Shown here in pieces: positions 4,758 to 41,571 of a stretch of 64,000 nucleotides of DNA (position 1 is its first letter; every line of letters starts with the position of its first letter). Where the stretch lies: the NCBI RefSeq assembly GCF_963921235.1, contig NC_086101.1:30008001-30072000 (forward strand), given 5' to 3'. The notes below the pieces were generated by a model that was not told the DNA's origin, made no database searches, and saw only the letters and a program-made list of their open reading frames with translations. The position numbers and the translations under genes were made by a program. This DNA comes from Mobula hypostoma. Taxonomy: Eukaryota.

Positions 4758-4763
4758 GAATAT

Positions 4764-5470: not shown

Positions 5471-5479
5471 ACCTCATGC

Positions 5480-9375: not shown

Positions 9376-9383
9376 TATAAATA
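9376..9383 (+). promoter_or_regulatory. Candidate TATA box of GPCR gene 1
   Basis: TATAAATA starts 76 bp before the ATG at 9452. The identical octamer starts 73 bp before the paralog's ATG. Confidence 0.6.
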
Positions 9384-9451
9384 GGACACAATTTCTAAAG
9401 CAAAGGACTGTGGTTTGGCCAAGTTACAATCAATACAGAGTGCATCTAAAT

Positions 9452-12050
9452 ATGGGACTGCCAGTAATCTTACAGGTAGAGAACGTATTCTATCCTTTTC
9501 TCGCAGTCATTGGGGTTCCCGGTAAGACGTTTAAACAAACCTAGCGCGTTTCTTTCTTTAGGAACTTTAGATGTTTCCATTTTAACTTGGTGTGTTTTAT
9601 TTGCAAACAATATTATCTAGTTTTAGTGCGTTCAGAACGTTCCAAATTTCTACCAATATTAAAAATAACAGTCTCAGAGCTATGCAGAGAAAATTAAGTA
9701 GAGGCTGAGCTTATTTAGTGCAATTGTCACGGACAAATACTTTTCTAAAATTTTAGGTAATATGCATTTTGGCATTGTAACACAACCGCAGATGACAGTG
9801 TTTTTAGTTTTACCGATACAAGGTTAATGGGAACAAATGAAAATAATAAAATGTTTGTCGGCATCTCGTTTAACCAGTGCTATGTGATTGTCTAAATTAA
9901 TTTAAGGTCACCCACGCAAACCTCTGATTACCTTGTAGTAATGAAATCCCTCCGACCCAGTCGGCATGAAGCTTTCTGCTAAACAGAAGCTTTTAATATA
10001 CAACCTAATGTGATTGATCCGGGAATAGTGCGACTGCTGCTACTTACGTTGCAAACCGCGGAATAAATTGGAGCTTTAACTCATATGTTTTGATCATGTC
10101 CTTTGTTGAAAAAATATTAGAAAGATATTTTTCATATTCTCTCAACTGTTTTGAATATTGACTTACAACCTCACGCAATTACTGCCATTTTTGGGTTACC
10201 AATGATAGAATCAAGTGATTTGCACTTTTAAGGTCGCTTTCTAGACAAGAATGCATGAAGGGCCTAATAGAACTCGAGAAGTAGTTATTGAGATACTGTG
10301 AATGTCTATTTCTATTTTCTACGCTTCTTCTGTAAGGTGCTACCTGGGATTCCAACGCAAAATTACAGTCTATAGTATTGGCTGAAATATATAGTATTTC
10401 AACATTTTGAAGATTCAGAGAATCTGTAAGACTTTGCTTTGGAGGAATATGAGACTAGTTCAAAGAATCAATTCAGACATTACTGAATAGCAGACCAGGA
10501 ATAAAAGGTGGAATGGCCTCTTCGTGTTCAATTTTGCACGTTTTTCGGCAAAATAAAACAGAATCCAATGCCACAATACAGGAAAGATAGAGTAAACCCG
10601 GCATCTTCAAGGAATCTCCGTTAGTGAGAGTCACGTAGCAGCCTACCATTTTACTGTCCTCGAAATGAGTTTCCCAGAGATAATTCGACAATGCAGGGTT
10701 CAGTTGCGTATTCTGCAATGGGCTATGTTTACTATTTTCCCTATTACTTGAGCTGTAATTATTCCCAATTGCACGTATGTAATATTGGGCAGATCCTAAC
10801 ATTGTCTATCATTAAGGATGGATTCGCCAGGGTAGCTTTGATTAGTTTCTCGTGAAATTCAGTGATGAGGTGTCAGTGCCTGCATGCTTCATTTTCATTA
10901 CGTAAAGCTCACCGCCCACCGGAAAACGCAAACCATAAACCAGTAGAACGCTGCCAAGCAAAGACTCAACTGTTTTAAAATAATTACTTGAATCAACGAA
11001 ACATTAATTTTCATTTCCACTCAACATCAACTGGATTGTGTCAGAGAGCAAGTGCAATGGAGTAGGAAAGTAAAAATAGCAATTTTAAGCAAAAACAAAC
11101 GTAAGTAAATATTAATTTGCTTTAATCTTTTCATAGCTAATTTGCTCGCAATCATCATTTTCTCCCGTGGAAACTGTGGTCTCTCGAAATGCATCACTCG
11201 TTACCTGGTGGGCATGGCGATGGGCGATCTAATGGTCCTGATAACTGAAGTAATTCTTTATGAGATTGTAGACGGCTACTTCCCATATTCCGTTTTCAAT
11301 CATACTCCGTTTTGCAGATGGAATCTTGTCGTGCACTTCATCTCAATTGACTGCTCTGTCTGGTTGACCGTGGCTTTTACCTTTGATCGATTTGCTGCTA
11401 TTTGTTACGAGTCGCTGAGAACGAATTACTGCACTGAAAGGACAGCAGCTATTGTGATAGCGGTCGTGTGTTCCTTGAGTATTTTGGAAAATGCTCCATT
11501 CTATCTTATATATGAACCACGAGAAATAATTGACAACATACAGTGGTCCTGCTATGTAAAATCAAGTTTTTACACTTCGCCCATATGGGTGGCATTTTTG
11601 TGGTTAGAAACTCTCATGACAACAATTTCCCCTTTTGTGCTAATCTTGCTGCTGAATTCTTTAACTATCAGACATATTATCCAGGCAAACAGACTCAGGA
11701 GTGGACTTCGTGGAAATAATCAGTTTAAGAAGGACACTGATTCGGAGGTGGACAACCGAAGAAAATCAATAATTTTGCTTCTCGCTATTTCAGGCACTTT
11801 TATTCTCTTATGGATGGTCATTTTCATATGTTACCTATATGTGCAATTTAGTGACACACAATTTCTAGAAGCAAGTTACAACGATCCTTTCACTATAGCG
11901 GAGCAAAGTGGGTATATGCTGAGGTGTTTGAGTTGTTGCACGAACACTTTTATATATGCAGTGTCCCAGAGGAAATTTAGAGAAGAATTAAAAGATTTGA
12001 TTATGACTCCCTTCCGTCTTATTTCCAACATTATCAGAGAATATAAATAG
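9452..12050 (+). CDS. GPR139-like class A GPCR, gene 1; exons 9452-9521 and 11137-12050; 327 aa
   Basis: Exon 1 MGLPVILQVENVFYPFLAVIGVP ends CCCG|GTAAG. Phase-1 intron ends TTTTCATAG|CTAAT and restores GVPANLL. Seven hydrophobic segments, TM2 Asp, C3.25, FDRF, ECL2 Cys, NTFIY, helix-8 RKFREEL. No frameshifts or stops. Confidence 0.93.
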
Positions 12051-12249
12051 CTTCTTAAAATAAAATACTGTCATCTAAAAGTGAGAGAATTTGTTGAAAT
12101 AAATTCTGAACTTCGGAATTCTCAAATTGTACTGGTTAGACATTATTCATGATAGAAGTGAAGCCCCCTGTCTTAGTGCACTTTAATTGTAAATTAAACC
12201 TATTCTATTCTCTTGGCGTTTCCATCAGCTCTTTCTGCAGACCCTAGTA

Positions 12250-12400
12250 ATCATCAACACAAGAGGATCCTTTAGCCAATTCACCTTTTACCGTTCTTGT
12301 AATTTGGTAGAAAACACCACAGCATGCAGGGAAACCCATGCAGTCACAGAAAGAAAGGAAGTGCTACACAGATCGCATCAGACGTCAGGATTGAAACGAG
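12250..12400 (-). mobile_element. Degraded V-SINE/HE1-type SINE fragment
   Basis: Resembles the V-domain core from memory (ttagccaatt...gggaaacccatgcagtcacag...ggattgaa). Confidence 0.45.
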
Positions 12401-12959
12401 GTGGTTGAAAGATAAATAACCTAAAACATCTCCCGTTGTTCATGATGCACTCAAGCCATGTGGTCTCTATAAATGAAGTCAAATTTGTTTAAGGGATATT
12501 AATTAAATATTGAGCGAATCTGTCATTGTTCAAAGTTATAATTGGGGGAAAATGCAGGTAACCATTTGAATATTAGCTGAAATTAACATTCATTAACTTC
12601 ATGCGTTTCCACTTAACGAACTGAAGGGTAATCTGCAGGTGAACTGAAATGACCCTACTTGGCTTCTGAATTGTATTTTTAATATTCTAAAATAATATTG
12701 CAAATGTTTTGTTACAATGTATTAGGCATCTATGATAACAATGTTTCTATGTGTTTCTTAATATACACGAGCATGGATCGCCATTCGCCCAAAATGTTTA
12801 TGCACCACTTCACTTGCTTGTAATAATACATTTTGTAAAAGGCGAAGTATTAGATTTAGACTTTATATTGATTTAAGGTAAAGTGAAAGATTTGATTTAC
12901 TTTTCGATCAAGCATTCAAGAAGTCTGATCCTTTTGAAAGTCTTTGACTGAAAAGTGAT

Positions 12960-14502
12960 GAGGCTTGTCTAAACTAAACATCTTGGAGCAGAAGGGAGAG
13001 CATCCAGATGTTTTGGTACATATTGGTACCAATGGCATAGGAGGGAATAGTGAAGAGGTCCTGAAGAGAAATTTTAAAGAGCTAGGCAGAAAGCTGAGGA
13101 GCAGAACACCCGGGGTAATAATTTACTGATTGCTCCAGTGAGGGTAGTAGCAGGATGATTTATCAAATTAATGTGTGGTTGAGAATCTGGTGCACAGGAC
13201 AGGGCTTCGTGTTCTTGCATCATTAGGTTGTAGCCTGGGGCAGCTATGACCTGCTCAAAAGTGACTGGTTGCACCTGAACCCAAAGGGAACCAGTATTCT
13301 CCCGCAGCACACATCAAAGTTGCTGGTGAACGCAGCAAGCCAGGCAGCATCTCTAGGAAGAGGTACAGTCGATGTTTCGGGCCGAGACCCTTCGTCAGGA
13401 CTAGAAGGGTTGCGTTCACCAGCAACTTTGATGTGTGTTGCTTGAATTTCCAGCATCTGCAGAATTCCTCGTGTTTGCAGTATTCTCCCGAGCAGGTTTG
13501 TTAGAGCTGTTGAGGTGGGGGCGTTAAACTAATTTGGCAGGGGAGCGTGAACCGCAGTGAAGAGACTCTGAACAGGACAGATGGTAAAAAAGCAAAGATA
13601 GTGTGCAATTAGACTGTCAGTAGGGGCAGGTAGATGACAGGACATAATTGCAGCTAACAGGTTGAGTATCATATAACCATGTAACAATCACAGCACAGAA
13701 ACAGGCCATCTCGGCCTTTCTAGTCCGTGCCGAACGCTTACTCTCGCCTAGTCCCATCTACCTGCACTCAGCCCATAACTCTCCATTCCCTTCCTGGCCA
13801 TATACCAATCCAATTTTTGTACATTAGGGATGCAAAATCAAAAATTGTAGCAAATGCAACACTCAAAAAGTTAAATCTCAATGCACGGAGTATATGAAAT
13901 AAGGTGGATCATCTTGTTGCACCATTACAGATTGTCGGGTATGATATTATGGCCATCAATGAATCGTGGCTGAACGATGATTGCAGTTGGAAAGCGAACG
14001 TCCAAGGCTACACGTTGTATCAAAGGGATAGGAAGGTAGATAACGGGGATGTTGTGTCTCTGCAGGTAAAAAATAGCATCAAATCATTAAAAAATGATGC
14101 AGCATAGAATCGGAAGATGTTGAATTGGATTGAGTTAAGAAACTGAAAGGGTAAAGGGACCCTGATGGCAGTTATATACAGGCATACAAACAGCAGCTGC
14201 GATATGGACCACACATTACAGCAGGAAATAGAAAAGGCGTGTTAAAAGGGCAATGTTATGAACGACATGGGAGACTGTAACATACAAGTCGATTGGAAAA
14301 ATAAGGTTGGAAATCGATGACAAGACAGTGAGTTTGTTCAATACCTATGAGGTGTTTTTTTTTTCAGAGCAGTTTGTCGTTGAACCTGCCAGAGGCTAAG
14401 CTATTCTGGATTGAGTGTTGTGTAATGAATCGGAAATGATTAAGGAGCTTAAGGGAGAGAGCCCCGAGGAACCACTGATCAGAATATGATTGAGTTCAAC
14501 TT
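12960..14502 (+). mobile_element. Degraded CR1 5' half (ORF1 esterase end + ORF2 endonuclease), with nested small insertions
   Basis: HIGTNGIG-like ORF1 segment. ORF 13904-14107 YDIMAINESWL...YTLYQRDRK. Ends after a DQNMIEFNL (SDHN-type) motif near 14476-14502. Confidence 0.75.
13305..13477. mobile_element. Mini Penelope insertion: inverted pLTR fragment + pLTR 3' end with tail
   Basis: 13-bp TSD CAGTATTCTCCCG at 13292-13304 and 13478-13490. About 26-bp inverted arms. Hammerhead core on the minus strand at 13367-13402. Confidence 0.85.
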
Positions 14503-14509
14503 GAGGCCC

Positions 14510-17324
14510 TAACCCGTCAGCCTAGGGGTGCCGCGGATAAAAGGTGGTACAAGCAGCAGTAATCAGATTGTTCAAAATATGAAGAAAGAACAGGAAATAG
14601 TTATTTAGATTGTCTGATCGATATCGGTCCCACCAAATCCTCTGTCCACCACCACCACCACCATCACCCCCCATCCCGCGGACATCTTCGTGAATGATAA
14701 TAACTCCTGACACCATTGGAATAGCCAGTATTTCCATGACAGAGCCTATCTCCACACCAGCCTCTGTACAGGTGGAGATAGGTTTTCAACAGGCACCTTA
14801 ATTATATCTTAAACAGCCCCGCTTCCCCTACCGGGTCGACGGACCATTTGAAAATTAGGACAATACTGATAGTACGGCTGAAATCTCCCCAAATTAGCGC
14901 CCCACGGATGCTACAATTAATCAACGGGCCAGAAAAGGTAAGAAGAAACACCGCCCATATTATACGTTGGCAACCAGTTGGCAATCCCTTATGCTTGGCA
15001 GTTCGAGAAAATGTATGACACATTGATAGGACAAGCCAACCTCTGTAAGCAATATTTGCAATATTTGATTACTACCAGCCGAGGAAAGAAGAAGCTGCAC
15101 TGCACGGTACTTTGCAAACTGACCCGCTCCATGATCAAGCTGTACTCCCTTAACTGCATGATAAAGAAAAGCTGAAGGCAACACCATATGCGTATTTTGG
15201 TACTGAGAGATTGGAGGTCCTGGTGGACTTAGTGGAAATCAGGAAGAAAGATTCCGACTAGGGGACTCCTCAGTGCTCCATTTGACAGTGTCCGTAAAAC
15301 CACCAGCAAAAGGTAAAGATATCGGGACGATGATAAAGCGATTGGTGAAAGAAACGAAGACTGTTTGTGTGATAACACTGCCCGTATTGGGACAAGAAGT
15401 GCGAATAGAATTATTTAATGAGAGGAAGTGGAAGATTATGCTAAAGTCCGAGATCTGGGAAACAACCTTCTAAAATCAACATCCACCAGTAACAGATCCT
15501 TTATTTCTCCCTGGAGCTTTAGCGCGGGTAGCAGCTAATTTACGGGCACAAAATTAATACCTGCTCCGGAGCATAAAGTTACTCTAAAAAAGAATGTGCC
15601 ACAGCCCTGCATTAAACAGTAGTGTATAGCTACTGAAGCGGAAAAGGTATCGTTCCAGTAATGGACTCATTATTGCAGCAAGGGAGGCTGGTGAAGACAC
15701 AAAGCCTGTGTAGCACCCCTACATTACGTATCTAAAAAGCAGGCCGAGACAATGAGTGGCGTTTTGTGCAGGACCTGAGAGTCATTCTAAATTAGTCCTG
15801 CCTATCGCTCAGCTTGTGCCTGACACCAACATTATACTTAGTTCTATGAACTTGCTGGGGCAGCCAAACTTCTCCATAAGTAGCAGCAGAGAAGGCTTGT
15901 GGAAGATCATGGAGAAGTTTGGCTGCCCCAGCAAGTTCATCACAATCGTCCGGCAGTTCCACGACGGTATGATGGTGAAAGTTCTGGATGACGGCGACGA
16001 GTCGGAGGCCTTCCCAGTGACAAATGGCGTCAAACAAGGCTGCGTTCTTGCCCCGACTCTGTTCAGTATGGTATTCTCTGCCATGCTGACAGATGCCTTC
16101 CGTAACTACGAAGAAGGAATCCACGTCAGGTACAGGACTGACGGCAGGTTGTTCAACCTTAGGCGCCTGCAGGCAGCTACAAAGGTGCAAGAGACTGTCA
16201 TCAGAGACTTCTTGTTTGCTGATGACTGCGCACTCAACGCCAGCACAGAGCATGAGATGCAGCGTGAAATGGACTGCTTCTCACAAGCCTGCGACAGCTT
16301 CGGTCTCACTATCAGCACCAAAAAGACCGTAGTTATGTACCAGCCTGCCCCAGGAAAGCGATACCAGGAGCCGCGCATCATGGTGAAGGGCCAGAACCTC
16401 CAGGCAGTCGACAACTTCACCTACCTGGGCAGCATACTCTCTCGCGCAGTGAACATAGACGCTGAAGTCAACAACAGGATTGCCAAAGCCAGCGCTGCCT
16501 TTGGGAGACTCCGTGAGAACGTCTGGGAGCGGAGAGGACTCAGCCTTACCACCAAGCTGAAGGTCTACTGTGCAGTGGTCCTTACCACCCTCCTTTACGC
16601 CAGCGAGACCTGGACTGTCTACAGCGGACACGCCAAACAGCTCAACCACTTTCACCTGAGCTGTCTCCGCAGACTCCTCCACATCAGGTGGCAGGACAAA
16701 GTCCCCGACATGGAAATCCTGGAACGAGCAGGGCTCTGCAGCGTCTACACCCTCCTGCTGAAAGCCCAAGCCAGGTGGGCTTGACCTGTGGTCAGAATGC
16801 CAGACAGCCGATTGCCTAAGCAGCTGCTTTACGGAGAACTGTGTCAGGCAAGCGCTCAGTCGGGGGCAGAAGAAACGTTACAAAGACTGCCTCAAAGCGT
16901 CCCTCAAATGCCTGGGTGTCGACATCAACACGTGGGAGACGCTTGCCCTCGACCGTCCAGCTTGGCGCAGCAAGATCACCACAGGAGCCCGTGCTGCTGA
17001 AGTCAGGCGCATCATCGAGGCGCAACGAAAGCGTGCTGTGCGCAAGGCCCGAGCAGCATCCACTGCCACGACAGCACCCACCCACTTGTGTCCCACATGT
17101 GGGCGAGCCTTCAGGGCCCGGATTGGCCTCATCAGTCACCTCCGGACCCACAGACACCATTTGACTTTGAAGCCATGGTCATCTTCGACTACGAAGGACG
17201 AACAGCAGCAGCAACTTAGTTCTATACCTATGGAAGCTAGTAAGAAGCTAGTTATCGATCTGAGTTCAGCACTTCCCGCGTTCTGCTGCCGAAGCAGAGC
17301 CAGTATTTATTTGCATTTACTTAT
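14510..17324 (+). pseudogene. Endogenous retrovirus pol fragment (class I, epsilon/gamma-like): protease, candidate 2H domain, RT N-terminus; split by the RTE insertion; no LTRs seen
   Basis: CLIDIGPTKSSV (decayed DTGA) at 14611-14646. RT reads EAEK(G)IVPVMDSLLQQG..TP..KAGRDNEWRFVQDLR..LVPDTNIILSS, and after the RTE continues IPMEASKKLVIDLSSA..SQYLFAFTY to 17324. Many stops and frameshifts. Confidence 0.88.
15848..17213 (+). mobile_element. 5'-truncated RTE (BovB-like) LINE with RT C-terminal half and C2H2 zinc finger
   Basis: GVKQGCVLAPTLF, LFADD, YLGS, CPTCGRAFRARIGLISHLRTH. 3' stem-loop CTTCG-ACTA-CGAAG and (CAG)n tail. 12-bp TSD ACTTAGTTCTAT at 15836-15847 and 17214-17225. One stop (16782-16784) and one frameshift near 16848. 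Confidence 0.95.
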
Positions 17325-17525
17325 ACCACAATCAGCTGTGGAGGCCAGGTCGTACGGTGTATTTAAATCAGAGCTTGATAGGTTTTTGATTGGACACCGC
17401 ATCAAAAGTTATGGGGAGAAGGCGGGGAAGTGGGGTTGAGGAAAGGAAAGAAAAAGATCAGCCATAATTGAATAGCGCGGCAGATTCGATGGACCAAATG
17501 GCCTAATTCTGCTCCTATGTCTTAA
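17325..17525 (+). mobile_element. CR1 3' end fragment
   Basis: PQSAVEARSYGVFKSELDRFL..GEKAGKWG followed by a CR1-type 3'UTR. Confidence 0.8.
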
Positions 17526-17852
17526 AGCATTTGCTTCATAGCACAGGATTATTCAACATTTGATGTTAGCAATTTAGTCTCTTGACCTAATACTAGTTGG
17601 ATTGCAGAGGTACACAGCAGTTATCAACGAAGGTAGAAAAGGTGAAAAAACCACATCATTGTCGTCACTACATACTTAAGGATGTTTGGTTACACGGGAC
17701 AACAACGATTTTGTTCCTGAATACCTTTAGGTGTATCTTCTGAATTTTAGGTTACTGATCATGAAAATCACTATGAAATTTCCCTACCACGCACCATTTT
17801 TGAAATAAACTTATATTTATTATTTCAATTCATAATTCAAGCCAATTAAAAT

Positions 17853-18003
17853 TCTCACAAAATGCTGGTGGAACGCAGAAGGCCAGACAGCATCTATAGG
17901 AAGAAGTACAGTCGACGTTTCGGGCCGAGACCCTTCGTCTGACACCAGTATTTTGTGTGTGTTACTTGAATTTCCAGCATCTGCAGATTTTCTCGCGTTT
18001 GCG
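17853..18003. mobile_element. Mini Penelope insertion (inverted pLTR fragment + tail)
   Basis: 10-bp TSD CAATTAAAAT at 17843-17852 and 18004-18013. Hammerhead core mutated (CAGACGA). Confidence 0.8.
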
Positions 18004-18159
18004 CAATTAAAATATTGCCAACAACGTAAGCTGGAAACTTTCCTATCTTGTCCATCCATGCTTGGGCATGCTGAGGCTGCGCGGCTGTTGCATGGCAGGA
18101 CAGGCCTTAGTAATAATTATTGGGTTCAGGACTGTAAGGATGGAAGTTTCTATCACCAG

Positions 18160-21100
18160 GCACAAAAATTTCTATGAAGGATTTTGATATTAGAGACACA
18201 TGCTCCCCAGAGTAACTGATGGCAAGATTAAGGAAAGCATGTTTGTTGGTCCACAAATCAAACAGGTCGTCAATGACAGTCAATTTGAAGATATTGTAGT
18301 GGGGTTGAAGAAAATCACATGGAAGGTATTCAATAGAAAATAGGTGCAGGAGTAGGCCATTCGGCCCTTCGAGCCGGCAACGCCATTCACTGTGATCATG
18401 GCTGATCATCCACAATCAGTACCCCGTTCCTGCCTTCTCCCCATATCCCTTGACTACGCTACCATTAAGAACTCTATCTAACTCTTTCTTGAAGCATCCA
18501 GAGAATTAGCCTCCACTGCGTTCTGAGGCAGAGCATTTCACAGATCCACAACTTTGTGGGTGAAAAATCTTTTTCTCAGCTCCGTTCCTAGTGGCCTACC
18601 CATTATTCTCAAATTGTGGCCTCTGCCTCTGGACTCCCCCAAAATCGGGAACATGTTTCCTGCCTCTAGCGTGTCCAATCCCTTAATAATCTTATACTTT
18701 TGAATCAGATCCCCTCTCATCCTTCTAAATTTCAGTGTATACAACCCCAGTCGCTCCAATCTTTCAACATATGAGAGTCCCGCCATCCCCAGAATTAACT
18801 CGTGAACCTACGCTGCACTCCCACAATAGCAAGAATGTCCTTCCTCAAATTTGGAGACCAAAACTCTACACAATCCTCCAGGTGTGGTCTCACCAGGGCC
18901 CTGTGCAACTGCAGAAGGACCTCTTTGCTCCTATACTCAACTCCCCTTGTTATGAAGACCAACATGCCATTAGTTTTCTTCACTGCCTGCTGTACCTGCA
19001 TGCTTACTTTCAGTGACTGATGAACAAGGACACCAAAATCTCGTTGTACTTCCCCTTTTCCTAACTTGACACCATTCATGTAGCAATCTGCTTTCCTGTT
19101 CTTGGACCAAAGTGGATAACTTCACATTTATCCACATTAAACTGCATCTCCCATATATCTGCCCACTAGCCCTACCTGTCCAAGTCATCCTGCATTTTCT
19201 CAACATCCTCCGCACATTTTACACTGCCACCCAGCTTTGTGTCATCTGCAAATTTGCTAATCTTACTTTTAATCCCTTCATCTAAATCATTAATATATAT
19301 TATAAATAGCTGAGATCCCAGCACCGAGTCTTGCGGTACCCCACTAGTCACCGCCTGCCATTCTGAAAGGGACCCGTTAATCCCTACTCTTTGTTTTCTG
19401 TCTGCCAACCAATTTTCTATCCATGTCAGTACCCTACCCCAAATACCATGTGCTCTAATTTTGCCCACTGATCTCCTATGTGGGACCTTATCAAAGGCTT
19501 TCTGGAAGTCCAGGTACACTACATCCACTGGCTCTTCCTCGTCCATTTTCATAGTTACATCCTCAAAAAATTCCAGAATATTAGTCAAGCATGATTTCCC
19601 CTTTGTAAATCCATGTTGATTCGGACCGATCCTGTTACTGCTATCCAAATATGCCGCCATTTCATCCTTTATAATTGACTCCAGTATCTTCCCCACCACT
19701 GATGTCAGACTAACTGGACTATAACTTCATTTTTTCTCTCTCCCTCCTTTCTTATAAAGTGGGATAACATTAGCTACCCTCCAGTCCTCAGGAACTGATC
19801 CTGAATCTATAGAACATTGGAAAATAATTACGAATGCGTCCACGATTTCTAGAGCCACCTCCTTAAGTACTCTGGGGTGCAGACCATCAGGCCCTGGGAA
19901 TTTATCAGCCTTTAGTCCCATCAGTCTATCTAACACCATTTTCTGCCTAATGTGAATCTCCTTCGTTACCCTAGGTCCTCTGGGCACCATTCCATCTGGG
20001 AGACTGTTTGTGTCTTACCTAGTGAAGACAGATCCAAAATACCTGTCCAACTTGTCTGCCATTTCCTTGTTCCCCATAATAAATTCACCCGTTTCTGTCT
20101 TCAAGGGCCCAACTTTGGTCTTAACTATTTTTTCCCTCTTCACAAACATAAAGAAGCTTTTACTATCTTCCTTTATAATCTTGGTTAGCTTGTCTTTGTA
20201 TCTTACCTTTTCTCTCCTTATTACCTTTTTAGTTGTTGCTCTTTAAAAGTTTCCCAGTCCTCTGGCTTCCTGTTCATCTTTGCTATGTTATACTTCTCTT
20301 TTATTTTTATACTATCCTTGACTTCTCTTGTCAGCCACGGTAGCCCCTTACTCCCCTTAGAATCTTTCTTCCTCTTTGGAAAGAACTGATCCTGCATCTT
20401 CTGTACTATTCCCAGAAATACCTGCCATTGTTTTCCACTGTCATCCCTGCTAGGGTATCTTTACAGTCAACTTTGGCCAGCTCCTCCCTCATGGCTCCAT
20501 AGTTCCCTTTGTTCAACTGCAATACTGACACTTCCAATTTTCCCTTCTCCCTCTCAAATTGTAGTTTAAAACTTAGCATATTATGGTCACGAACTCCTAA
20601 TTGCTCCTTTACCTCGAGTTCCCTTATCAAATCCGGTTCGTTACACAAAACTGAATCCAGAATTGCCTTCTCCCTGGTTGGTTCCCCTATAAGCTGCTCT
20701 AAGAATCCATCTCGGAGGCAGTCCACAAACTCCCTTTCTCGGGGTCCAGTACCAACCTGATTTTCCCAGTCTAGGTGCATGTTAAAATCCCCCATAACAA
20801 CCGTAGTATTGCCTTTGCGACATGCCAATTTCAACTCTTGATTCAACTTGCACCCTATATCCAGGCTACTGTTTGGGGGCCTGTAGATAACTCCCATTAG
20901 GGTCTTTTTGCCCTTACAATTTCTCAGTTCTATCCATGCCGACTCTACATTATATGTCGCCCCTCGCAAGGGACTGAATTTTATTCCTCACCAACAGAGC
21001 CACCCCACCCCCTCTGCCCACTTGTCTGTCCTTTAGATTGGAAGTATACCCTTGAATATTTATTTCCCAGCCCTGGTCCTCTTGCAGCCATGTCTCTGTT

Positions 21101-30330: not shown

Positions 30331-30339
30331 TACAGTACC

Positions 30340-30772: not shown

Positions 30773-31359
30773 CAATAATAATAAATAAGATTGAGAACAT
30801 CAATTGCAGTTTGTGAGTATATAGGTTGTGGAATCAGTTCAGTGCTCGGCGTGTGAACATGAGCTCAGAGTATATTACCAACTTTCCCGTGTGAATGGCT
30901 GTTGTGATTGGGCGAGAGACTCAGTGTGGGGAACAGGTACCTTCGTCTACGGTTCATTGTCGATACTAAGTCATGTTGATACTAAGTGAGATGACACTGC
31001 CCCAGCAAAATGAACTGTATTTGACGATGTTTGCGATGGAATGCAAAGTAGAGATCCACCGACAGGTTGCTGGAAGTCAGGTTTTGCATCCGGCAGCTCT
31101 TGTTCCATCTCTCCCAACCTGACAGTTTTCTACTAGCTTCCCCCGTCTTTCTTTCGCGTCCTGATTAACGGTTTTAACTAACTGTCTGTCGCTATAGAGC
31201 AATTTTAAGAAGTTCACGGCATCTTAACAGATCAGTTAACGTATTCAACCAGAGCAATACAAACAAAATGCTGGAGGAACTCAGTAGGTCAAGCAGCATC
31301 TATGGAAATGAGTAAAAAGTCGATGTTACGGGCCGAGGCCCTTTGAAGATCTATTGGAG

Positions 31360-33050: not shown

Positions 33051-34329
33051 TAAGTACCCATGGCTGTGAGTATGGATTTCAGCTGCACTTGTCCGAAACT
33101 GGAATGTATGATTATTGCAATCGGAACTGCGCGCAAATAGTAACCACTTAATGGCGTCTTATGGAAAAGATGCTGATATGAAGAAAACGCAGCATCTCTT
33201 TAGACAGTAATCACTTAAATGCCTGTAGGAATTAATAGGTCCTGTACCGGAGTCAAAAGACATTAATGGTTATACAGTTCATTCAGTCAAATGTAGTTTA
33301 GAAATTCGTTTGTGATTTTAAAAGATCAGTATTTTCGACTGAATTTTGAAGTTAAATATGTGCATTCGTGAGTACATATGGACACAAACGTTAGGAATTC
33401 TCCATGGTGATGCCTTCAGGTCTTTTTTTTGCACTGTAAATATAAAGAGTCAGTTATATATGCAATAGTTGCCATCTATATTATGTTCCATAGATATTGG
33501 AAGAGTTCGGAAAAATTGTAGTGGCGCACATGCTTTCACATTACTTAAGAAGAAGAAGGATGAAGAACAGCGGAAAGCTACGTATTAATTAACCTAATAT
33601 TAGTAGCAGGGATGTAATACAGGCTATTATGAAGACTGTGATAATAAATTGGCAATGCATTTTGAAAATATTAGCGTTGCGAATTCAGAAGCGAATCATC
33701 CGGCAGAATTATGTGCAGGGTTGACAGGAAGCATGCTAATGTTGCGCAACGAGAACTTCAGTGAGAGTGGTCATGTGTTTTGAATCTTATAGAAAGTATA
33801 AGACAATGTGCCCTGAACGAATTTGTTCAATTATCACACTGTCATCAATTTTCGCTGAGGGATTGTTATGATAGGGAGCGCAACCGGATATGTTCTTCTT
33901 AATCTACAGGCATCTTGCAAACCAATTGAATAATCTTTGTAGACAGATTTTGTGCTTGAGTAATTCCGGTTACTCAAATGATATTTCTTGGCAGCTTTTT
34001 TTTCATCTCGCCTCCTGTTTTTGCTTATTCGTTAAACGCAAAGTCTGAAGGACTTTAACACCGTGATTCCCTCCGGCTGAAAGAATAATTACACACTTGC
34101 TTACCGCAATTATCAAGGCGAAAGTTCAGTTCAGGAATAAACAGTATAGAGAGAACCCTTTGCCACGATCCCCACAACAAATTCACCATTTTATTTTCTC
34201 CACATTCCAATAAATCTATTCTCTCACAGTTAACTTCATGTTGATTGTCACGATTGTACATATATACAACCAAACCAAACAATGTTCCTCCGGACCACGT
34301 GCAACCAGAATGCAAATGTACAGAACGCA

Positions 34330-35040
34330 TAAAAAAAAAACAAAATATTGCCAGAAATAAGTTAATGATGTATAATTCGAAATGCGTGTAAGGAGCATCA
34401 AAGGTAAACAGTAAACAGGAAATAGTTCGCTGTCCTGGTGATGCGCCCCCGTTGGTGACTGGATATTTATTTGTCTCACAGTCTGTGGAAATAATCTGTT
34501 ATCCAGTCTGGCAGTCCTAGTACTCAAGCTCCTGTTCCTCCTTCCTGACGCCAGTGGATCTACAATGCTTCGGACTTTTCTAAAATAACGCTCCTGTTAA
34601 ATGTCACACTGATCCTCTCGGCGATTTTTGTTTTACTATGCTCTGTAGGGTCTTAGGCTTTCATCAGGTTTGCGGCTTCCGTAGCGCACAATGATGCCGC
34701 CAAATAGAGCACTATGGTCCATTCTAACAACTCTTTACAGGAGCACCCGATAGTGCTGCTGTGGGGAGTTAGAATGGGGGCATGGGGCCTTGCATACTCC
34801 AATCTCCTCATAAAGTTATAACGCTGATGTGCCTTCTTGACTAATGAGGAGGAGTTGTGGTTCCAGGTCAGTTGGTCCGTAATGTGTACAACAAGGAATT
34901 TGTGCGCTCGATTCTCTCCAGGGGAGAGCCATTGATATGCAAAGGAGAGTGGGCGACCTGCGCCTTTCTGGTTCACAACCATCTCTTTTGTCTGGTTTAC
35001 GTTAAGAATGAGGTGCTGTCGTAACATTTGACAAACCTAC
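34330..35040 (-). mobile_element. Rex1/Babar LINE 3' part
   Basis: LNVNQTKEMVV, KFLVVHITDQLTW, VKKAHQR, TRTARLDNRLFPQTVR. Confidence 0.75.
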
Positions 35041-37247
35041 CTACATCCTCCAAGGCAAAAGGAGTTCAGTCACATCAGTGAGCAAAGTCGGGGTGTGGCT
35101 TTGTCGCGTGCCAGAACTAACGGACAAGGAAACTAATATTGTTGTCACTCTGAAACGCAGTTAACCACACAGTTACTGTCTGATCTGATGAGTATTCTGG
35201 CACCTTCCTCTTCTGTACTTGGGATTAAATATGTCGTTGCACTGAGCTGAAAGTCTATACCTACAAACAGAGAGAATTAAAGTACACTATTAACCATGGA
35301 ACAAGCTGTCAGTTTTAAACGTCTCTGCTCACGCCTCTGCTTGGGCACAAAAGCCTTCACCTTACAGATCCACCTTAGCAATCAGAGAACCACAATGCAC
35401 TGACTAAACATGTTAACATGAATCTCAATCCATTGAAGACTAAGAAAAGGAGACTTTAATGACACAAAGCAAAATCTCAACAGAGGACCGGGGGTAGCTA
35501 TAATCTGACGAAAGCTACAAAACCAAAAACTTTAATTACACATATGAAGTTGCAGTGCGCACTTCGGTTGTATTGTTGAAAGTCTATTTTTGCAAGGCAT
35601 TTCCCCAAGATGTGACAGATCCAATTCATCAGCGACCATCAAGCACACTAAGCTTGTACCAACCCTATTTTATTCTCTTTACGTTTGCCTCAGCTCCACC
35701 ACCACGCAGATTTTACTCTGTGCCGCCTTTATGCTTTTGCCACTTAACTGGCCGTAGCACCGATGGCGAAGTTAACTAACTTTCTCTTTGAACGTCAATG
35801 CATCTTACACCTGTGCTGGCCCAGCTCTATAAAGAATCATAAGAATTGTGTGTTAACCGTACTTCCGAGGCGAATGGTTCATATATACATCATAGAATCA
35901 AGCCACCAATTCCACACCAAATTTTCACTTACACAAATATTAACCTTTTTATATTCTTCCCACATTCCCATCAATACCTAGTTTTACCACGCCCTCAAAC
36001 CCGAGTACCCGTGAAAGACACGTCTGATCACAGTAAGAACATGAAAGCTCCACATAATTATACCGGAGGTCAGTATCGAACAACACCCTTGAGCTGTAAG
36101 GCAGTATTCTCAGAGCTGTGTTATTGTGCCATCATTATATCTGTAAATATAACAAATCAGACTCAAAGTTCAGGCACACCATTGAATCACCACGTGGAAC
36201 GGCTTTAAAACCGCAATTGCTATCAATCAAGGATCATCTTGGAGGAACATGTGTAAAGAATCAACTTAACTTAATATTTACATGTATTAGGAATTTTCTG
36301 TGCTGTGTTTGTAGTGGCGTGACATGTAGCCAACAAAAAATACAACATTATATAATTATAAAGGATTATAGTATTTAAACATGAAGAATTTAAATGGCGT
36401 ATGTGAATAAAATTTGCACGTATTTACGATGTAAACAACGTACTAATAACTGGGTTAAAGTATCTACAGAGTATTGTACTGATGGAGTAATGGGGAGGTG
36501 GGTGATGGTAACTAGAGTAGCTTATCGAATTCACGAGAGATTCTGCAGATGCTGAAAATGGTTGTAATTTCATTGGCTTTTCAGTCGGCCTTGGATCACC
36601 TGAACAATAGTAATGTTTATGTCAAGCTGTTTTTTTTTACTAAATACAGCTCAGCGTTCAACGCAATTATATCCTCAGTTTGAACCTATACTCTCCAAAC
36701 ACTGGACCTCGGTACCTCCCTCTGCAACTGGAACTTTTACTTCCTCATTGGGAGACCAATTCCTGTGCGAATCAGAAAAAATGTTTCCTCCTCGCGGACA
36801 ATTAACACTGGCAATCAACGATGTGTGCTTAGATAACTGTTCTACTCTCTCCACGGCCAGAAGTGTATGACTAGGGACTGCTGAAACGCCATCTATAAAT
36901 TTACCAAGGACACGACAATCCAGAATTTTCAACTTTGAGTAGGAGGCATAAAGGAGGGAGCTAGATCAGCTGGTTGAGTGGTGTTGCAGCAACAACGTTG
37001 TACTCAATGTCAGTAAGACTTAGGAATTGATTACAGACATAAGGAAGGGAAAGTTGAGGGTGCACAGACCAGGCCTCATTGAGGGTACCATGATCCGGTC
37101 CGTGAAACCGCATTTTGGTTCACGGTCCGGTCCATCGATCCTTATTCCAGGTTTTCCGGTTTTTCCCGGTTCTATTGAGACAACTGATTCTCGTTTTGGG
37201 CTGGACGTAAATACTTCTGCAAAGCAGGGATTGGATATTGAACTGTT

Positions 37248-37252
<5 letters not shown>

Positions 37253-37307
<55 letters not shown>
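37253..37307. repeat. (CT)n/(AG)n microsatellite
   Basis: Directly visible; about 27 units. Confidence 0.97.
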
Positions 37308-37310
<3 letters not shown>

Positions 37311-37724
37311 CCCTCTCCCCTTCCATCCGAATCCCTGTCTCCCTGTCTGAAACCTCGCTTGCAACCTCGCCTGAAAACTTTATCTGCAACTTTGTCAGTA
37401 TCCCCGTCAAGTTCAACCGCCGGAGTGAGACAGGAGCCTTGCCACGACAAGAAAAGGAACCGTCTATTGTTGAGTTTGCAACTGTCTCTTTGTGTCCCCG
37501 TGTTTAATGTCCGTATCAAAGAAAAGTCCTGGCCCTAGGTCATGTACCCAAGGGGGGTTCTGACTCTGTATAAAGCCCTGGCCCTAAGTCCTGTTCCCAA
37601 GGAGAGGTCCTGGCTCCCTGTTCTGTGTATGACTCCTGGCCCTACGTCTTCTTTCTAATGAGGGGTCCTGACTCTGCGTGGAGACCCGATCCTAAGTCCC
37701 GTTCCCAAGAGAGGATCCCGGCTC

Positions 37725-37870
37725 TGTGTTCTGTTTTCCTGTGCTCGGATCCAAGCTCCGTGTTCCTGTGCTCAAGTCCAAGGCTCTGTGTTCCTGTGCT
37801 CGTCCAAGGTTCTATGTTCTTGTGTTCAAGTCCTCGGCTCTGTGTTCCTGTGCTATAAGACCAAGTCCAG
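37725..37870 (+). repeat. Imperfect tandem repeat, about 27-29 bp unit (TGTGTTCCTGTGCTCAAGTCCAAGGCTC), about 5 copies
   Basis: Directly visible inside the LTR. Confidence 0.8.
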
Positions 37871-38862
37871 GCGTCGTGTTCCAGCCCTGCCCAAGTCTGA
37901 GCTTCGTGTGCTCATTCAGTTCTGGTGCTTCGCCCAGCCTAGGGTTTCCTGGCCCAGCCCGGTGTTGGAGATTCCTCGTCCTGTGCTGGGGTGCCTCGTC
38001 CTGTCCTGTAGCCACGTCCTGTCCTTGCCAAGATCCTAGTCCCCAGTCCTAGCCTAGACCCCGGTTCCGGTTCCGTGTCAAGACCCAAGTTCCGAGTCCC
38101 AACCAAGAGCCAGGTTCCGGGTCCTTGTTCAGGCTCTGGTTCCGGAGTTCCATGTTCCTAGTCCAGGCACTTTGTTCCTAGTTCCACGTCTGGGTCCCAT
38201 GTTTCTAGTCCAAGTCCTTGCCCAGGCCCTGAATCCTAGTCTCGTCCAGGGCCTGTATCCCTGTCCAGCGTCATTTCTTCCTGATTCACTTTGCTATCTC
38301 GATAACCGTAGTCCAGTTCCTAGTACTTCAGTGTCTGTGTCTTGCATTTGGGTCCGCCATCAACACCCACCGTATAGCAGAAGGATCTGAAGTGGACAGA
38401 CTGAGCTGTTACAAGTTCTTGCGTGTCAACAACTTTGAGGGTCATTCCTAGGTACAACATATTGATGCAATTACAAATAATGTATGGCAGCGGCGTTTTT
38501 CACTCGGCGAATTGGTATATCGCCAAAGACAAACGCAAATTTCTTCAGATATACTGTGGAAAACATTCTAACTTGTTGTATCGCCTCCTAGTATGGAAGC
38601 GCCACTTCGCAGATTGAAAAAAAAAACGGCTGTAGGAACTTATAATCTCAGCTAGTTCCATCATGGGAACTACAGTATCCCTAGCATCCCTTTGAATATT
38701 CGCGTTGGCTGTGGAAAATAACAATAAATATTGTCAGTACGGTCCCTAGAAAGCACCAGACTTTGGAAGATTAGCAATAATCTATATTTAATCTATTTCC
38801 AAACAAGGGTAACTAAAGACAATCATTACATAATCTTCCTGTTTTAACGAAGACTTTTCAGG

Positions 38863-38870
38863 TATAAATA
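38863..38870 (+). promoter_or_regulatory. Candidate TATA box of GPCR gene 2
   Basis: TATAAATA starts 73 bp before the ATG at 38936; position matches the paralog. Confidence 0.6.
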
Positions 38871-38935
38871 ATGTTAGCTTGATGCAGTAGATTGGCATCC
38901 GGACGGCAATCAAGTAACGTTGTTTCTCTACCAAC

Positions 38936-40419
38936 ATGGGAGGACCGGTAATCGTACAGATAGAAAACATTTATTACCCTATTCTTGCGGTGATTGGTGT
39001 TCCCGGTAAGTACCTAAAATTAAGAATGTGTAGTTTTGATTGAATTGTCCGTTCCGTTCGCATTTGCAGATGACAATTTATCGAGTCGAATAGAAAACAT
39101 ATGACATTCTTAAAAAAGATTAATTTACAAAATTCTCCATAAATCAAGCTGCTAATCATTCTGAATAGCGCATGCTTAACACTAAGCACAACCTGACGTG
39201 ATGTACCTCATTGATGGTAGATCGTCAGTGCGGTGTGAGCTGCCATTGCCTGTCTGATTCGTTTTCATGTGGTAAAACTCCCACCACCCATCGTAAAAGA
39301 CTAGTCACAATCTAGTAGCAATTTTGTAAGTGAAGGCAAACCATTATTTTTTGAAACAAATCAGAATGGTTTTTCAACTTAACTCAAGGCTAAGTTTCCC
39401 TTGCTACTGAACATCGTCTGGATCGCCAGAGCGAGGAAGTGCAATGGTGTAAGAAAATCAGATCAAGTTTAAACAAATAGAAAAAAACATTAAATCGCTT
39501 TAATCCTTTTGCAGCTAACTTTCTGGCGATCATCATTTTCACTCGTGGAAACTGTGGTCTCTCGAAATGCATCACTCGTTACCTGGTGGGAATTGCCGTG
39601 GCCGACTTATTGCTGTTGATAACTGAAGTAATTCTCTATGAGATTGTAGATGGATACTTTCCATTTTCCATTTTTAATCATACACAGTTTTGCAGATGGA
39701 ATCTAGCTGCGCATTTTATCGCCATCGACTGCTCTGTTTGGCTGACTGTAGCTTTTGCCTTCGATCGTTTTGCGGCTATCTGTTATCAGTCGCTGAGAAT
39801 GACATATTGCACAGGAAGGACCGCAACTATTGTGATAGCAGTGGTGTGTTCCGTGAGCATTTTGGAAAATGCTCCATTCTATTTTATATACGAACCGCGG
39901 AAAATAATTGACAACATACAGTGGTCTTGCAACGTAAAATCAAGTTTTTACACTTCACTCATCTGGGTGGCATTTTTGTGGTTGGAAACCGTCTTGACAA
40001 CAACTTTCCCCTTTGTGTTTATCTTGCTGCTGAACTCTTTAACGATCAGATGCATTGTCCTAGCAAATAGAGTAAGGAACGGACTTCGGGGAAGTAAGCA
40101 GTCAGAGAAGGACACTGATCCGGAGATAAAGAACCGAAGGAAATCTATAATTTTGCTTCTCGCTGTTTCTGGCACGTTTATTCTTTTCTGGATAGTAATT
40201 TCCGCATGTTATATATATGTACAATTTACTGACACCCAATTTTTGGAGGAAAGTTACAGCGACACATTCACCATAGTGGAACAAACAGGATATATGCTGA
40301 GGAGCTTGAGTTGTTGTACTAACACTTTTATTTATGCAGTGTCGCAGAGGAAATTTAGAGAGGAATTGAAGAATATCATTAAGGCTCCCTTCATTCTCAT
40401 TACCAATGCGCTCATGTAA
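38936..40419 (+). CDS. GPR139-like class A GPCR, gene 2; exons 38936-39005 and 39515-40419; 324 aa
   Basis: Exon 1 MGGPVIVQIENIYYPILAVIGVP ends CCCG|GTAAG. Acceptor TTTTGCAG|CTAAC. Same phase-1 intron position and motifs as gene 1 (FDRF, NTFIY). Intact frame, no indels versus gene 1. Confidence 0.93.
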
Positions 40420-41571
40420 GCTGAATAACTTCAAAACCTACTGTTATTAAAAAGAATAGAAGTTGTTTAAATAGCTTGTATACTTGGATGTTCAAAGTGA
40501 AAAGAGCTGATAGAATTCATCATAGAAACTGTCCCTTTGTCCTACCGTACACGAATTCGCAACTACACACATTCCATGCTCCTGGTATCCTCACCACCGC
40601 CCCTTCTCCCCACACCATGACCACTGCAAACTTCATTATTTCATCTAAACAATTTAACTTTTACCGAAATTGCAGATATGGACATAGCATAAGCAGAAGG
40701 GGTTCGTTTATAGAGGCGATTAATTACTGTGTTGGGTATCTGCCGTAACCGATCATGATGTGCCCTATGCGGGTGGAATTTTACAGTGAAAAAGCCGTTG
40801 CACTGAGGCTATTCGTCTCTCACGCCCTCAAAAGTATTGGTCCACTGGTGCGAAAAATCGTCACAACTGGCAACTTCCTCGACTGCAATGGATAGTCTTG
40901 ACTTCTTCTTTGCCTTGTCATGCCCTTCGCTCTCCATGAAGCGTGGCAGCACGCCTTTCTTGGCGGTTGGATCTTTAGTAAATCGCATCCACCCAGTCCG
41001 CCGGAACTGGCCTGGCATTCCGGGGTAGGCATATTCCTATATCACCGGGTTTGGATTTTCCCGGTTGCCCTTATTTGGTTTAGATCGCCTGTCGAAGCGG
41101 TGTACCGAGATGTGCACATTATCGTATACATACAGTTACTAGCTTAATAAGTTTGGCGCAACACTGTGGGTGATGAACCTGTGGTCTGTTCTATTGTTAT
41201 GCATTCTATGTTCTATGAGATGTTACCAAATGTACCATCAGATAGAAACAGAAATAACACCACAGGGAATTTGAATGAAAGAGCTCTATTTCCCCATTTA
41301 CTCGTAAGGCTGACTCTGTTGATTGTGCGGAGTATGGGGCAAAGAGCTTAGTGTTGGAGACAGAGTACTGCGAACTGTGGAAAATAGTCCCCTAGTCGCT
41401 TGGGAGAGGTACTGAGATTCAGGCTAGTATGTAAGCCAGAGGTAGATAGAACAGCAGACTGGCAGTACGGAGTCATAATCCACTGTCGCTGATCAGGGTA
41501 CACGATGACCGAGAAGGACACCACTTTAACTGGGAAACTGCAGAGGTTCTGGCACCGGCAAAGATTAAGCA

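What the first reader, a model, noticed from the sequence alone, without database searches (positions are those of the whole stretch)
9376..40451. Tandem GPR139-like GPCR pair: candidate lineage-expanded receptor repertoire of unknown function
Seen: two intact, same-strand paralogs 29.5 kb apart with an identical intron position, about 69 substitutions over 324 aligned aa (manual count) and no indels, kept intact among decayed repeats. They have a very short N-terminus, lack the TM6 proline and have NTFIY in place of NPxxY. Known: mammalian GPR139 responds to L-Trp/L-Phe, and from memory shark and ray annotations list many 'probable GPR139' models without functional data. Inference: small clustered, diverging 7TM genes resemble chemosensory or immune receptor arrays, so this may be part of an uncharacterised sensing family.
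Basis: partly seen in the sequence, partly recalled or inferred. Interest (0 to 1): 0.72.

Follow-up and report, generated by a model that had tools for sequence, protein, structure and literature searches.

The report
Cartilaginous-fish orphan receptor gene pair
Two intact neighbouring genes encode receptors from a very large, unstudied receptor family found only in sharks, rays and chimaeras, which may be sensory receptors that have been overlooked in animals known to have few classical smell receptors.

Summary
Two same-strand, two-exon genes (A 9452-12050, 327 aa; B 38936-40419, 324 aa) differ by 69 substitutions. They share a phase-1 intron in TM1, a TATAAAT about 75 nt upstream of the ATG, and a poly(A) signal just after the stop. 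dN/dS is 0.16 and dS 0.66, so this is an old duplicate kept by purifying selection among decayed LINE fragments.

They are class A GPCRs but not GPR139 orthologues: a single sequence scores only 27 bits against human GPR139. They belong to a family seen here only in cartilaginous fishes, with roughly 2,000 database proteins. At least 66 come from horn shark, and at least 5 from Callorhinchus. Species-specific clades point to birth-and-death evolution. The nearest outgroup, at about 30% identity, is a conserved single-copy orphan of non-mammalian jawed vertebrates. That orphan links the family to GPR139.

Family-wide traits are no P6.50, NTxxY, W3.41 and acidic residues at pocket positions. Variation is concentrated in the extracellular half.

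The expanded-repertoire reading is supported. A sensory role remains an inference, because no expression or ligand data could be reached. I found no publication on the family.

The parts
9376..9382 (+). TATAAAT, putative TATA box of copy A, 76 nt upstream of the ATG
   Evidence: The same heptamer lies 73 nt upstream of copy B's ATG. Promoter function is inferred, not shown.
9452..9521 (+). Copy A coding exon 1: Met1 to the first base of codon 24 (short N-terminus and first half of TM1)
   Evidence: GT donor at 9522. tblastn hit. 77% nucleotide identity to B exon 1.
9522..11136 (+). Copy A intron, 1615 bp, phase 1, GT..AG
11137..12050 (+). Copy A coding exon 2, from N1.50 to the stop (TM1 second half to helix 8)
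   Evidence: Pfam 7tm_1 E 5e-23. AF2 model pLDDT 92.7.
12059..12064 (+). AATAAA, candidate poly(A) signal of copy A (a second one at 12098)
   Evidence: motif only.
38863..38869 (+). TATAAAT, putative TATA box of copy B, 73 nt upstream of the ATG
38936..39005 (+). Copy B coding exon 1
39006..39514 (+). Copy B intron, 509 bp, phase 1, GT..AG, same position as in A
39515..40419 (+). Copy B coding exon 2, to the stop
   Evidence: Pfam 7tm_1 E 5e-22.
40446..40451 (+). ATTAAA, candidate poly(A) signal of copy B
   Evidence: motif only.

Best explanation
A and B are two functional tandem paralogues. They belong to a very large class A GPCR family found here only in cartilaginous fishes; public annotation pipelines label its members 'probable GPR139'.

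Each gene is a compact two-exon unit: a TATA-like motif, a 70-nt first coding exon, a phase-1 intron inside TM1, and a second exon carrying the rest of the receptor.

The proteins keep the parts needed to fold and couple to G proteins. These are N1.50, D2.50, the C3.25-ECL2 disulphide, D-R-F, P5.50, F6.44, W6.48, N7.49, Y7.53 and helix 8. They lack both the TM6 and the TM7 prolines.

The family grew by repeated local duplication (birth-and-death). Its intracellular half is strongly conserved, and its extracellular half and pocket positions vary. It therefore most likely acts as an array of receptors that share one signalling output and differ in ligand.

Acidic residues are conserved at pocket positions. 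From this I infer small cationic ligands such as amines, polyamines or basic amino acids or peptides. I also infer deployment as external or internal chemosensors.

Shown: gene structure, intactness, purifying selection, family size, taxonomic range and relationships. Inferred: G-protein signalling, ligand class and sensory deployment.
For: Intact genes with canonical splice sites, matching TATA-like and poly(A) motifs.

Purifying selection: dN 0.106, dS 0.665, omega 0.16. Omega is 0.10-0.14 against a third genomic relative, L002.

Fold: Pfam 7tm_1. The AF2 model has seven helices plus H8 and an ECL2 hairpin, with pLDDT 92.7 and pTM 0.89. Foldseek matches active peptide-type class A receptors at TM about 0.75.

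Family size and range: 2282 and 2144 hits. All named top hits are chondrichthyan. At least 66 distinct proteins come from Heterodontus on many scaffolds, 41 from Heptranchias, and 5 from Callorhinchus.

Birth-and-death pattern: single-species clades of up to 12 genes. A and B are sisters with 100% support.

Outgroup chain: family versus the conserved orphan group, hhalign E 2e-51 at 27% identity. That group versus GPR139, 98 bits, against 61 for the next hit. The intron site, W3.41 and the missing P6.50 and P7.50 are shared.

Variability, as mean column entropy: pocket positions 1.86 bits, extracellular-half non-pocket positions 1.47 bits (p 0.011), intracellular half 0.91 bits.

Acidic pocket positions across 102 family sequences: D/E3.37 in 99, E/D5.42 in 84, E/D2.57 in 75, E/D7.35 in 80.
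Against: There is no expression, ligand or signalling evidence of any kind. The Logan contigs examined are genomic, not transcripts.

Pocket enrichment of variability weakens among close paralogues (p 0.09). All GPCR families vary more on the extracellular side, so this pattern is not specific.

Pocket positions were assigned by counting from motif anchors, not from model coordinates.

The pairwise omega of 0.16 gives no sign of positive selection. Only 3 of the 63 A/B differences within exon 2 fall on the pocket positions used.

Loss of P6.50 and P7.50 could alter or weaken canonical activation.

Family counts come from 90%-identity clusters that include isoforms, fragments and some outgroup proteins. 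Only two top-120 lists were inspected.
Confidence: 0.6

Rival explanations
1. They are receptors for internal signals, such as neuropeptides, amino-acid metabolites or neuromodulators. On this view they are expressed in brain or endocrine tissue as GPR139 and GPR142 are, and the expansion follows an internal ligand family rather than environmental chemicals.
For: The nearest characterised relative, GPR139, is a CNS receptor, and GPR142 is a pancreas and gut receptor for L-Trp and L-Phe (PMC7318219). The ECL2 beta-hairpin and the Foldseek neighbours are typical of peptide receptors. Strong purifying selection, omega 0.16.
Against: Internal-ligand receptors usually stay as 1:1 orthologues. The sister orphan group behaves that way, at 55-66% identity from shark to reptile. 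This family instead shows dozens of copies per species and species-specific clades. GPR139 contact residues H5.43x, R6.51 and N7.38x are replaced.
Confidence: 0.22
2. They are sensors in non-neuronal tissue, for example immune cells, skin, gill or gut. They would resemble formyl-peptide, MRGPR or chemokine-type expansions that respond to microbial or tissue-damage cues.
For: Clustered, fast-duplicating class A receptors also occur in immune and itch systems (established knowledge). Chemokine receptors appear among profile and fold matches, though not at the top.
Against: No specific sequence link to those families was found. GPR139 and peptide receptors rank higher. No expression data exist.
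Confidence: 0.1
3. They are ordinary orthologues of GPR139 or GPR142, as the database names suggest.
For: Public models of close relatives are named 'probable G-protein coupled receptor 139'. GPR139 also has two exons (PMC7318219).
Against: Human and zebrafish GPR139 are 70% identical. Here a single sequence scores 27.5 bits against GPR139, below the V2 receptor at 29.5 bits. Sharks carry a separate conserved GPR139-like orphan (P0277, P0284) that sits outside this family with 100% support. There are dozens of copies per genome.
Confidence: 0.01
4. They are relics: recently inactivated or non-functional duplicates whose reading frames are open by chance.
For: They sit in repeat-rich DNA. No transcript evidence was found.
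Against: dS of 0.66 with dN of 0.11 over 321 codons, and no stop or frameshift in either copy, cannot be neutral decay. Splice sites and flanking motifs are kept in both copies.
Confidence: 0.03

Closest known systems
GPR139 and GPR142 (aromatic amino-acid-responsive orphan class A GPCRs)
   Same: GPR139 is the best solved-structure match for the family profile (63 bits). Both share the TM1 motif G-x-P-A-N, W3.41, F3.33, W6.48, absence of P7.50 (NFFLY versus NTFIY) and the helix-8 motif K/R-F-R (alignment). GPR139 also has two exons (PMC7318219).
   Different: Identity is only about 20%. A single sequence does not separate GPR139 from V2R. GPR139 keeps P6.50, whereas this family has V/T/L there. 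GPR139 agonist contacts H5.43x, R6.51 and N7.38x are E, I and Y here. GPR139 is single-copy and highly conserved, while this family has dozens of copies per genome.
Conserved unnamed orphan of non-mammalian jawed vertebrates (P0233 Latimeria, P0277 Scyliorhinus, P0278 sturgeon, P0279 newt; labelled 'probable GPR139', sometimes fused to TMEM183A models)
   Same: It is the nearest outgroup: about 30% identity, hhalign E 2e-51. Shared traits are the intron site before N1.50, a very similar exon 1 (FYP-LA-IG-P), W3.41, no P6.50, no P7.50 and the helix-8 motif TQxKFRxEL.
   Different: It behaves as a 1:1 orthologue, 55-66% identical across gnathostomes. It has E-R-F rather than D-R-F, lacks W6.48 (S/C), and has R6.51 and D7.42 where the shark family is variable or has R/Q.
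Vertebrate chemosensory class A families (OR, TAAR)
   Same: The resemblance is by analogy only. Shared patterns are large copy number, tandem arrangement, species-specific clades, a conserved intracellular half with a variable extracellular half, and acidic pocket residues that recall amine recognition by TAARs through D3.32 and D5.42 (TAAR point from established knowledge, not tested here).
   Different: No specific homology was found. Pfam reports only 7tm_1, with no olfactory-receptor model hit at E<=0.01. These genes contain an intron, whereas OR and TAAR coding regions are typically single-exon (established knowledge, not tested here). Expression in sensory neurons is unknown.

Membership tests
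Class A (rhodopsin-like) GPCR | Match to Pfam PF00001 (7tm_1) above the gathering score | tested here: met
   82.3 and 79 bits against a cut-off of 30.5.
Class A (rhodopsin-like) GPCR | Seven-helix bundle with helix 8 | tested here: met
   AF2 pLDDT 92.7, pTM 0.89. The first half of TM1 is missing from the modelled exon-2 product. Foldseek TM 0.70-0.76 to class A receptors.
Class A (rhodopsin-like) GPCR | Core residues N1.50, D2.50, C3.25-C45.50, D/E-R-Y/F, P5.50, W6.48, N7.49, Y7.53 | tested here: met
   All are present in A and B, and in 88 (N1.50; 11 further rows have a gap there) to 102 of the 102 family sequences.
Class A (rhodopsin-like) GPCR | Prolines of CWxP (P6.50) and NPxxY (P7.50) | tested here: not met
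   6.50 is V in A and B; across the family it is V 66, T 17, L 8, P 4. 7.50 is T in 98 of 102. These are common but not obligatory class A features.
GPR139 / GPR142 orthologue | High identity to GPR139 (human-zebrafish 70%, PMC7318219) | tested here: not met
   27.5 bits, E 1.6e-5 against human GPR139, below V2R.
GPR139 / GPR142 orthologue | Agonist-pocket residues F3.33, H5.43x, W6.48, R6.51, N7.38x (PMC5430874) | tested here: not met
   F3.33 and W6.48 are kept. The other three positions are E, I and Y in A and B. Equivalences were made by counting from anchors.
GPR139 / GPR142 orthologue | Two-exon gene | tested here: met
   Two coding exons in A and B. GPR139 is reported to have two exons. 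The exact GPR139 intron site was not checked here.
GPR139 / GPR142 orthologue | Activation by L-Trp or L-Phe | not testable with these tools
   Needs a cell assay.
GPR139-related superfamily (broad sense) | GPR139 is the best characterised relative by profile comparison | tested here: met
   Family profile: GPR139 63.4 bits, TRHR 52.6. Bridge group profile: GPR139 98 bits, NTSR1 61. Family versus bridge group: E 2e-51.
Chondrichthyan expanded 'probable GPR139' family (unnamed) | Nested inside the chondrichthyan clade, separate from the conserved orphan group | tested here: met
   100% SH-aLRT split in both trees. A and B fall inside a 37-46-gene clade with 98% support.
Chondrichthyan expanded 'probable GPR139' family (unnamed) | Signature residues: ICL1 C-G-L-S-x-C, D3.37, W3.41, D-R-F, W6.48 without P6.50, N-T-x-x-Y, and an N-terminus of about 10 residues | tested here: met
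Chondrichthyan expanded 'probable GPR139' family (unnamed) | Phase-1 intron immediately before N1.50 | tested here: met
   A and B. Acceptor sites at the same place in genomic contigs L001 and L002.
Chemosensory receptor multigene family (functional category) | Many copies, genomic clustering and species-specific clades | tested here: met
   The A/B pair is 29.5 kb apart, and many members share chromosomes (for example the 74.47-Mb Heterodontus record).
Chemosensory receptor multigene family (functional category) | Sequence variation concentrated at ligand-contact positions | tested here: inconclusive
   Pocket versus extracellular non-pocket positions: p 0.011 for all 102 sequences, p 0.09 for the closest 74.
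Chemosensory receptor multigene family (functional category) | Sparse, receptor-selective expression in sensory cells | not testable with these tools
   No transcript data could be reached.

The most novel reading that the evidence does not exclude
This family is a seventh major vertebrate chemoreceptor family, so far unrecognised. It would be specific to cartilaginous fishes and supply the ligand diversity that their very small OR, TAAR and ORA repertoires lack. Its acidic binding pocket would be tuned to amines or other cationic odorants or tastants, and each sensory cell would express one receptor.
Probability: 0.25. Interest if true: 0.85.

Novelty: new member of a known kind. Interest (0 to 1): 0.55.

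Why it matters
Catshark olfactory repertoires are reported to be dominated by V2Rs, with only 5-8 genes in each of OR, ORA and TAAR (PMC6368271). A later paper describes the shark nose as a de facto vomeronasal organ (PMC10116579, title). Surveys of vertebrate chemoreceptors consider six GPCR families (PMC10869828 abstract).

A class A family with tens to probably more than a hundred genes per elasmobranch genome lies outside those six. It has birth-and-death dynamics and is named only by automated annotation. That makes it an obvious candidate for part of the missing chemosensory capacity, or otherwise for a large unexplored signalling system.

The idea is directly testable with existing shark and skate tissue RNA-seq and with simple cell assays.

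The family also offers natural examples of class A receptors that work without the TM6 and TM7 prolines. In addition, it exposes a conserved non-mammalian orphan related to GPR139.

Tried and rejected
1. True GPR139 orthology was rejected.

2. I searched for a third copy or pseudogene in the window and found none.

3. I looked for duplicated flanks. Homology stops about 130 bp upstream of exon 2 and about 50 bp after the stop. The shared block at 13304-13478 / 41569-41785 is a dispersed repeat with copies elsewhere in the window, not part of the duplication.

4. I looked for expression evidence. The Logan contigs carrying relatives (L001, L002) contain intron acceptor sequence, and the N-termini of the other Logan-derived models run through intron-derived residues in the same way, so they are genomic rather than transcripts. 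The catshark sensory atlas paper has no held supplements, and its text mentions no such GPCRs.

5. I tried to see neighbouring genes in Heterodontus, but no DNA was available.

6. Foldseek against the PDB did not discriminate. It returned generic peptide-type class A receptors, and GPR139 was not among the 50 matches listed.

7. Literature searches found nothing on this family.

8. I could not place true GPR139 or GPR142 in a tree, because no tool gave their sequences as usable ids and I did not type sequences. That relationship rests on profile scores only.

Pocket residues were therefore assigned by generic numbering rather than by geometry.


Full report
**1. What is in the sequence**

Open frames on the + strand show two long GPCR-like exons, each with a short upstream exon.
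- Copy A: ATG at 9452, GT donor after 9521, AG acceptor before 11137, stop ending at 12050. Product 327 aa.
- Copy B: ATG at 38936, donor after 39005, acceptor before 39515, stop ending at 40419. Product 324 aa.
- In both, the intron is phase 1 and splits the codon that precedes N1.50 (GVP|AN). Intron lengths are 1615 and 509 bp.

The proteins align without internal gaps: 255 identities, 69 substitutions and a 3-residue C-terminal length difference.

Both genes have TATAAAT at 76 and 73 nt upstream of the ATG. Both have a poly(A) hexamer 9-27 nt after the stop.

tblastn finds no further copy or remnant in the 64 kb.

Nucleotide similarity between the two loci covers only exon 1 and exon 2, plus about 130 bp of intron and 50 bp of 3' flank. 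A shared block about 1.2 kb downstream of each gene is a dispersed repeat that also occurs at 17.9 kb and 62-63 kb. The rest of the window is decayed LINE material: endonuclease, reverse transcriptase and an esterase-like ORF1.

**2. Are the genes alive?**

Nei-Gojobori estimates over 321 codons give dN 0.106, dS 0.665 and omega 0.16. The highest local omega, 0.42, falls in the third intracellular loop. Comparisons with a third genomic relative (L002, 82% identical to A in an ungapped comparison of the exon-2 product) give omega 0.10-0.14.

This is an old duplication with both copies under purifying selection. It is not decay.

**3. What kind of protein**

Both products match Pfam 7tm_1. An AlphaFold2 model of A's exon-2 product, built with a 108-sequence alignment, has pLDDT 92.7 and pTM 0.89. 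It shows the helices, an ECL2 beta-hairpin and helix 8. Foldseek returns generic peptide-type class A receptors such as CCK1R, ghrelin, somatostatin and galanin receptors, at TM about 0.75.

Residues present: N1.50, D2.50, C3.25 with the ECL2 cysteine, D-R-F, P5.50, F6.44, W6.48, N7.49, Y7.53 and F8.50. Residues absent: P6.50 and P7.50. The N-terminus before TM1 is only about 8-10 residues. About 60% of family members carry an N-x-S/T sequon in ECL1, just before C3.25.

**4. The family**

A search with A's exon 2 gave 2282 proteins at E<=1e-5. The best 120 are 46-80% identical. All that carry a name are from sharks, rays and skates, mostly labelled 'probable G-protein coupled receptor 139'. 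Some have other automatic names such as sex peptide receptor-like, V2R-like or FMRFamide receptor-like.

An exhaustive search of 50%-identity representatives gave 109 clusters at E<1e-30. The representatives I looked up are again elasmobranch, plus Callorhinchus milii.

A search from the Callorhinchus member gave 2144 proteins at E<=1e-20. In just two top-120 lists I counted 66 distinct Heterodontus francisci proteins on many different scaffolds, 41 from Heptranchias, 20 from Pristiophorus, 18 from Rhinoraja and 5 from Callorhinchus. These totals include isoforms, fragments and some outgroup proteins, so they indicate scale rather than a census.

Trees of 97 and 192 sequences show the following:
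- The chondrichthyan genes split from the outgroup with 100% support.
- There are many single-species clades: up to 12 genes in Heterodontus, 9 in Pristiophorus and 8 in Heptranchias.
- The five Callorhinchus genes form one clade nested inside the family.
- A and B are sisters (100%), with skate genes as their nearest neighbours, though with weak support.

This is birth-and-death evolution.

**5. Relationship to GPR139**

A single sequence against all PDB chains scores 29.5 bits with the V2 receptor and 27.5 bits with GPR139. Orthology is therefore excluded, since true GPR139 is 70% identical between human and zebrafish (PMC7318219).

A 26-sequence family profile puts GPR139 first, at 63.4 bits against 52.6 for TRHR.

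The next tier in the representative search, at about 30% identity, is a group from coelacanth, salamanders and teleosts. Searching from the coelacanth member shows a conserved gene, apparently single-copy, in sharks, sturgeon, teleosts, amphibians, turtles and squamates. Members are 55-66% identical to one another.

That group's profile hits GPR139 at 98 bits, with NTSR1 next at 61. It aligns with the shark family at hhalign E 2e-51.

The group shares several traits with the window genes: exon 1 (FYP-LA-IG-P), W3.41, no P6.50, no P7.50 and the helix-8 motif. Genomic single-exon ORF calls of that group diverge upstream of exactly the residue before N1.50. This indicates the same intron site.

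So 'GPR139-like' holds in a broad sense: GPR139 / conserved orphan / chondrichthyan expansion. I could not add true GPR139 or GPR142 to a tree, so the branching order is not established.

**6. Hints about mechanism**

Column entropy across 102 family members averages 0.91 bits in the intracellular halves of the helices. It averages 1.47 bits in extracellular-half non-pocket positions and 1.86 bits at 31 canonical class A pocket positions. Pocket versus extracellular non-pocket gives p 0.011. Among the closest 74 sequences this weakens to p 0.09.

This fits a shared signalling interface with diversified ligand recognition. The same trend exists in most GPCR families, so it is only suggestive.

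GPR139 mutagenesis identified F3.33, H5.43x, W6.48 and N7.38x as important, and modelling added R6.51 as a ligand contact (its mutants lost surface expression) (PMC5430874). A and B keep F3.33 and W6.48 but have E, I and Y at the other three positions.

Across the family, pocket positions are notably acidic: D/E3.37 in 99 of 102, E/D5.42 in 84, E/D2.57 in 75 and E/D7.35 in 80. From this I infer a preference for cationic ligands. These positions were assigned by counting from motif anchors, not from coordinates.

**7. What is not known**

I found no expression, ligand or signalling data. The Logan contigs I inspected are genomic. The catshark sensory atlas text does not mention these genes, and its supplements are not held.

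Ten literature searches found no description of the family. The library does not cover most subscription journals, so this is absence in what could be searched, not proof of absence.

**8. Verdict**

The genes are new members of a class A GPCR family seen here only in cartilaginous fishes. That family is very large, present in public annotation and, as far as I could search, uncharacterised.

The expanded-repertoire interpretation is supported. The sensory role is plausible and testable but not shown.

I rate the pair itself as a new member of a known kind. The family behind it deserves attention because the classical olfactory repertoires of cartilaginous fishes are small (PMC6368271).

Noticed in passing
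window 2018-4656 (+), 15756-16784 (+), 19172-20969 (-), 47617-48399 (+), 58118-58837 (-), 60904-61728 (-): Decayed non-LTR retrotransposon fragments: AP-endonuclease and reverse-transcriptase domains, plus one GDSL/esterase-like ORF of the kind seen in some LINE ORF1s. Apart from the two receptor genes, no ORF of at least 130 aa that was scanned looks like a host gene; smaller exons were not searched for.
   Followed up: partly
window 13304-13478, 17863-18002, 41569-41785, 62083-62268, 63109-63236: A dispersed repeat of about 170-220 bp that matches itself in both orientations, like a MITE or SINE with internal inverted repeats. By chance it lies about 1.2 kb downstream of both receptor genes.
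   Followed up: partly
window 4762-5476 versus 30304-29587: Inverted pair of repeats about 720 bp long at 78% identity, presumably two copies of one transposable element.
   Followed up: no
window 37248-37317, 37730-37854, 38021-38128: A (TC)n microsatellite and two minisatellites with 28/54-bp and 50-bp units, lying 0.8-1.7 kb upstream of copy B's first exon.
   Followed up: no
window 11137-12050 and 39515-40419 (residue 5.47, exon-2 position 162); L002: A, B and the Logan relative L002 have T at 5.47, where 94 of 102 family members have a second TM5 proline (consensus L-T-P-x-x-P). This marks a small subclade with a different TM5.
   Followed up: partly
proteins P0233, P0277-P0394 (not in the window): A conserved orphan GPCR, apparently single-copy, occurs from sharks to reptiles; none of the hits listed is from a mammal or bird. 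It is annotated as 'probable GPR139' or 'GPR142', or fused to TMEM183A models. It lacks W6.48, P6.50 and P7.50, and it appears to have no name of its own.
   Followed up: partly
L002 (Logan SRR33849666), L001 (Logan SRR17051963): These genomic read assemblies from unidentified samples carry close relatives. P0005, encoded on L002, is 80% identical to A and is the closest hit found. The window's own species seems absent from the annotated protein set, and its nearest tree neighbours are skate genes.
   Followed up: partly
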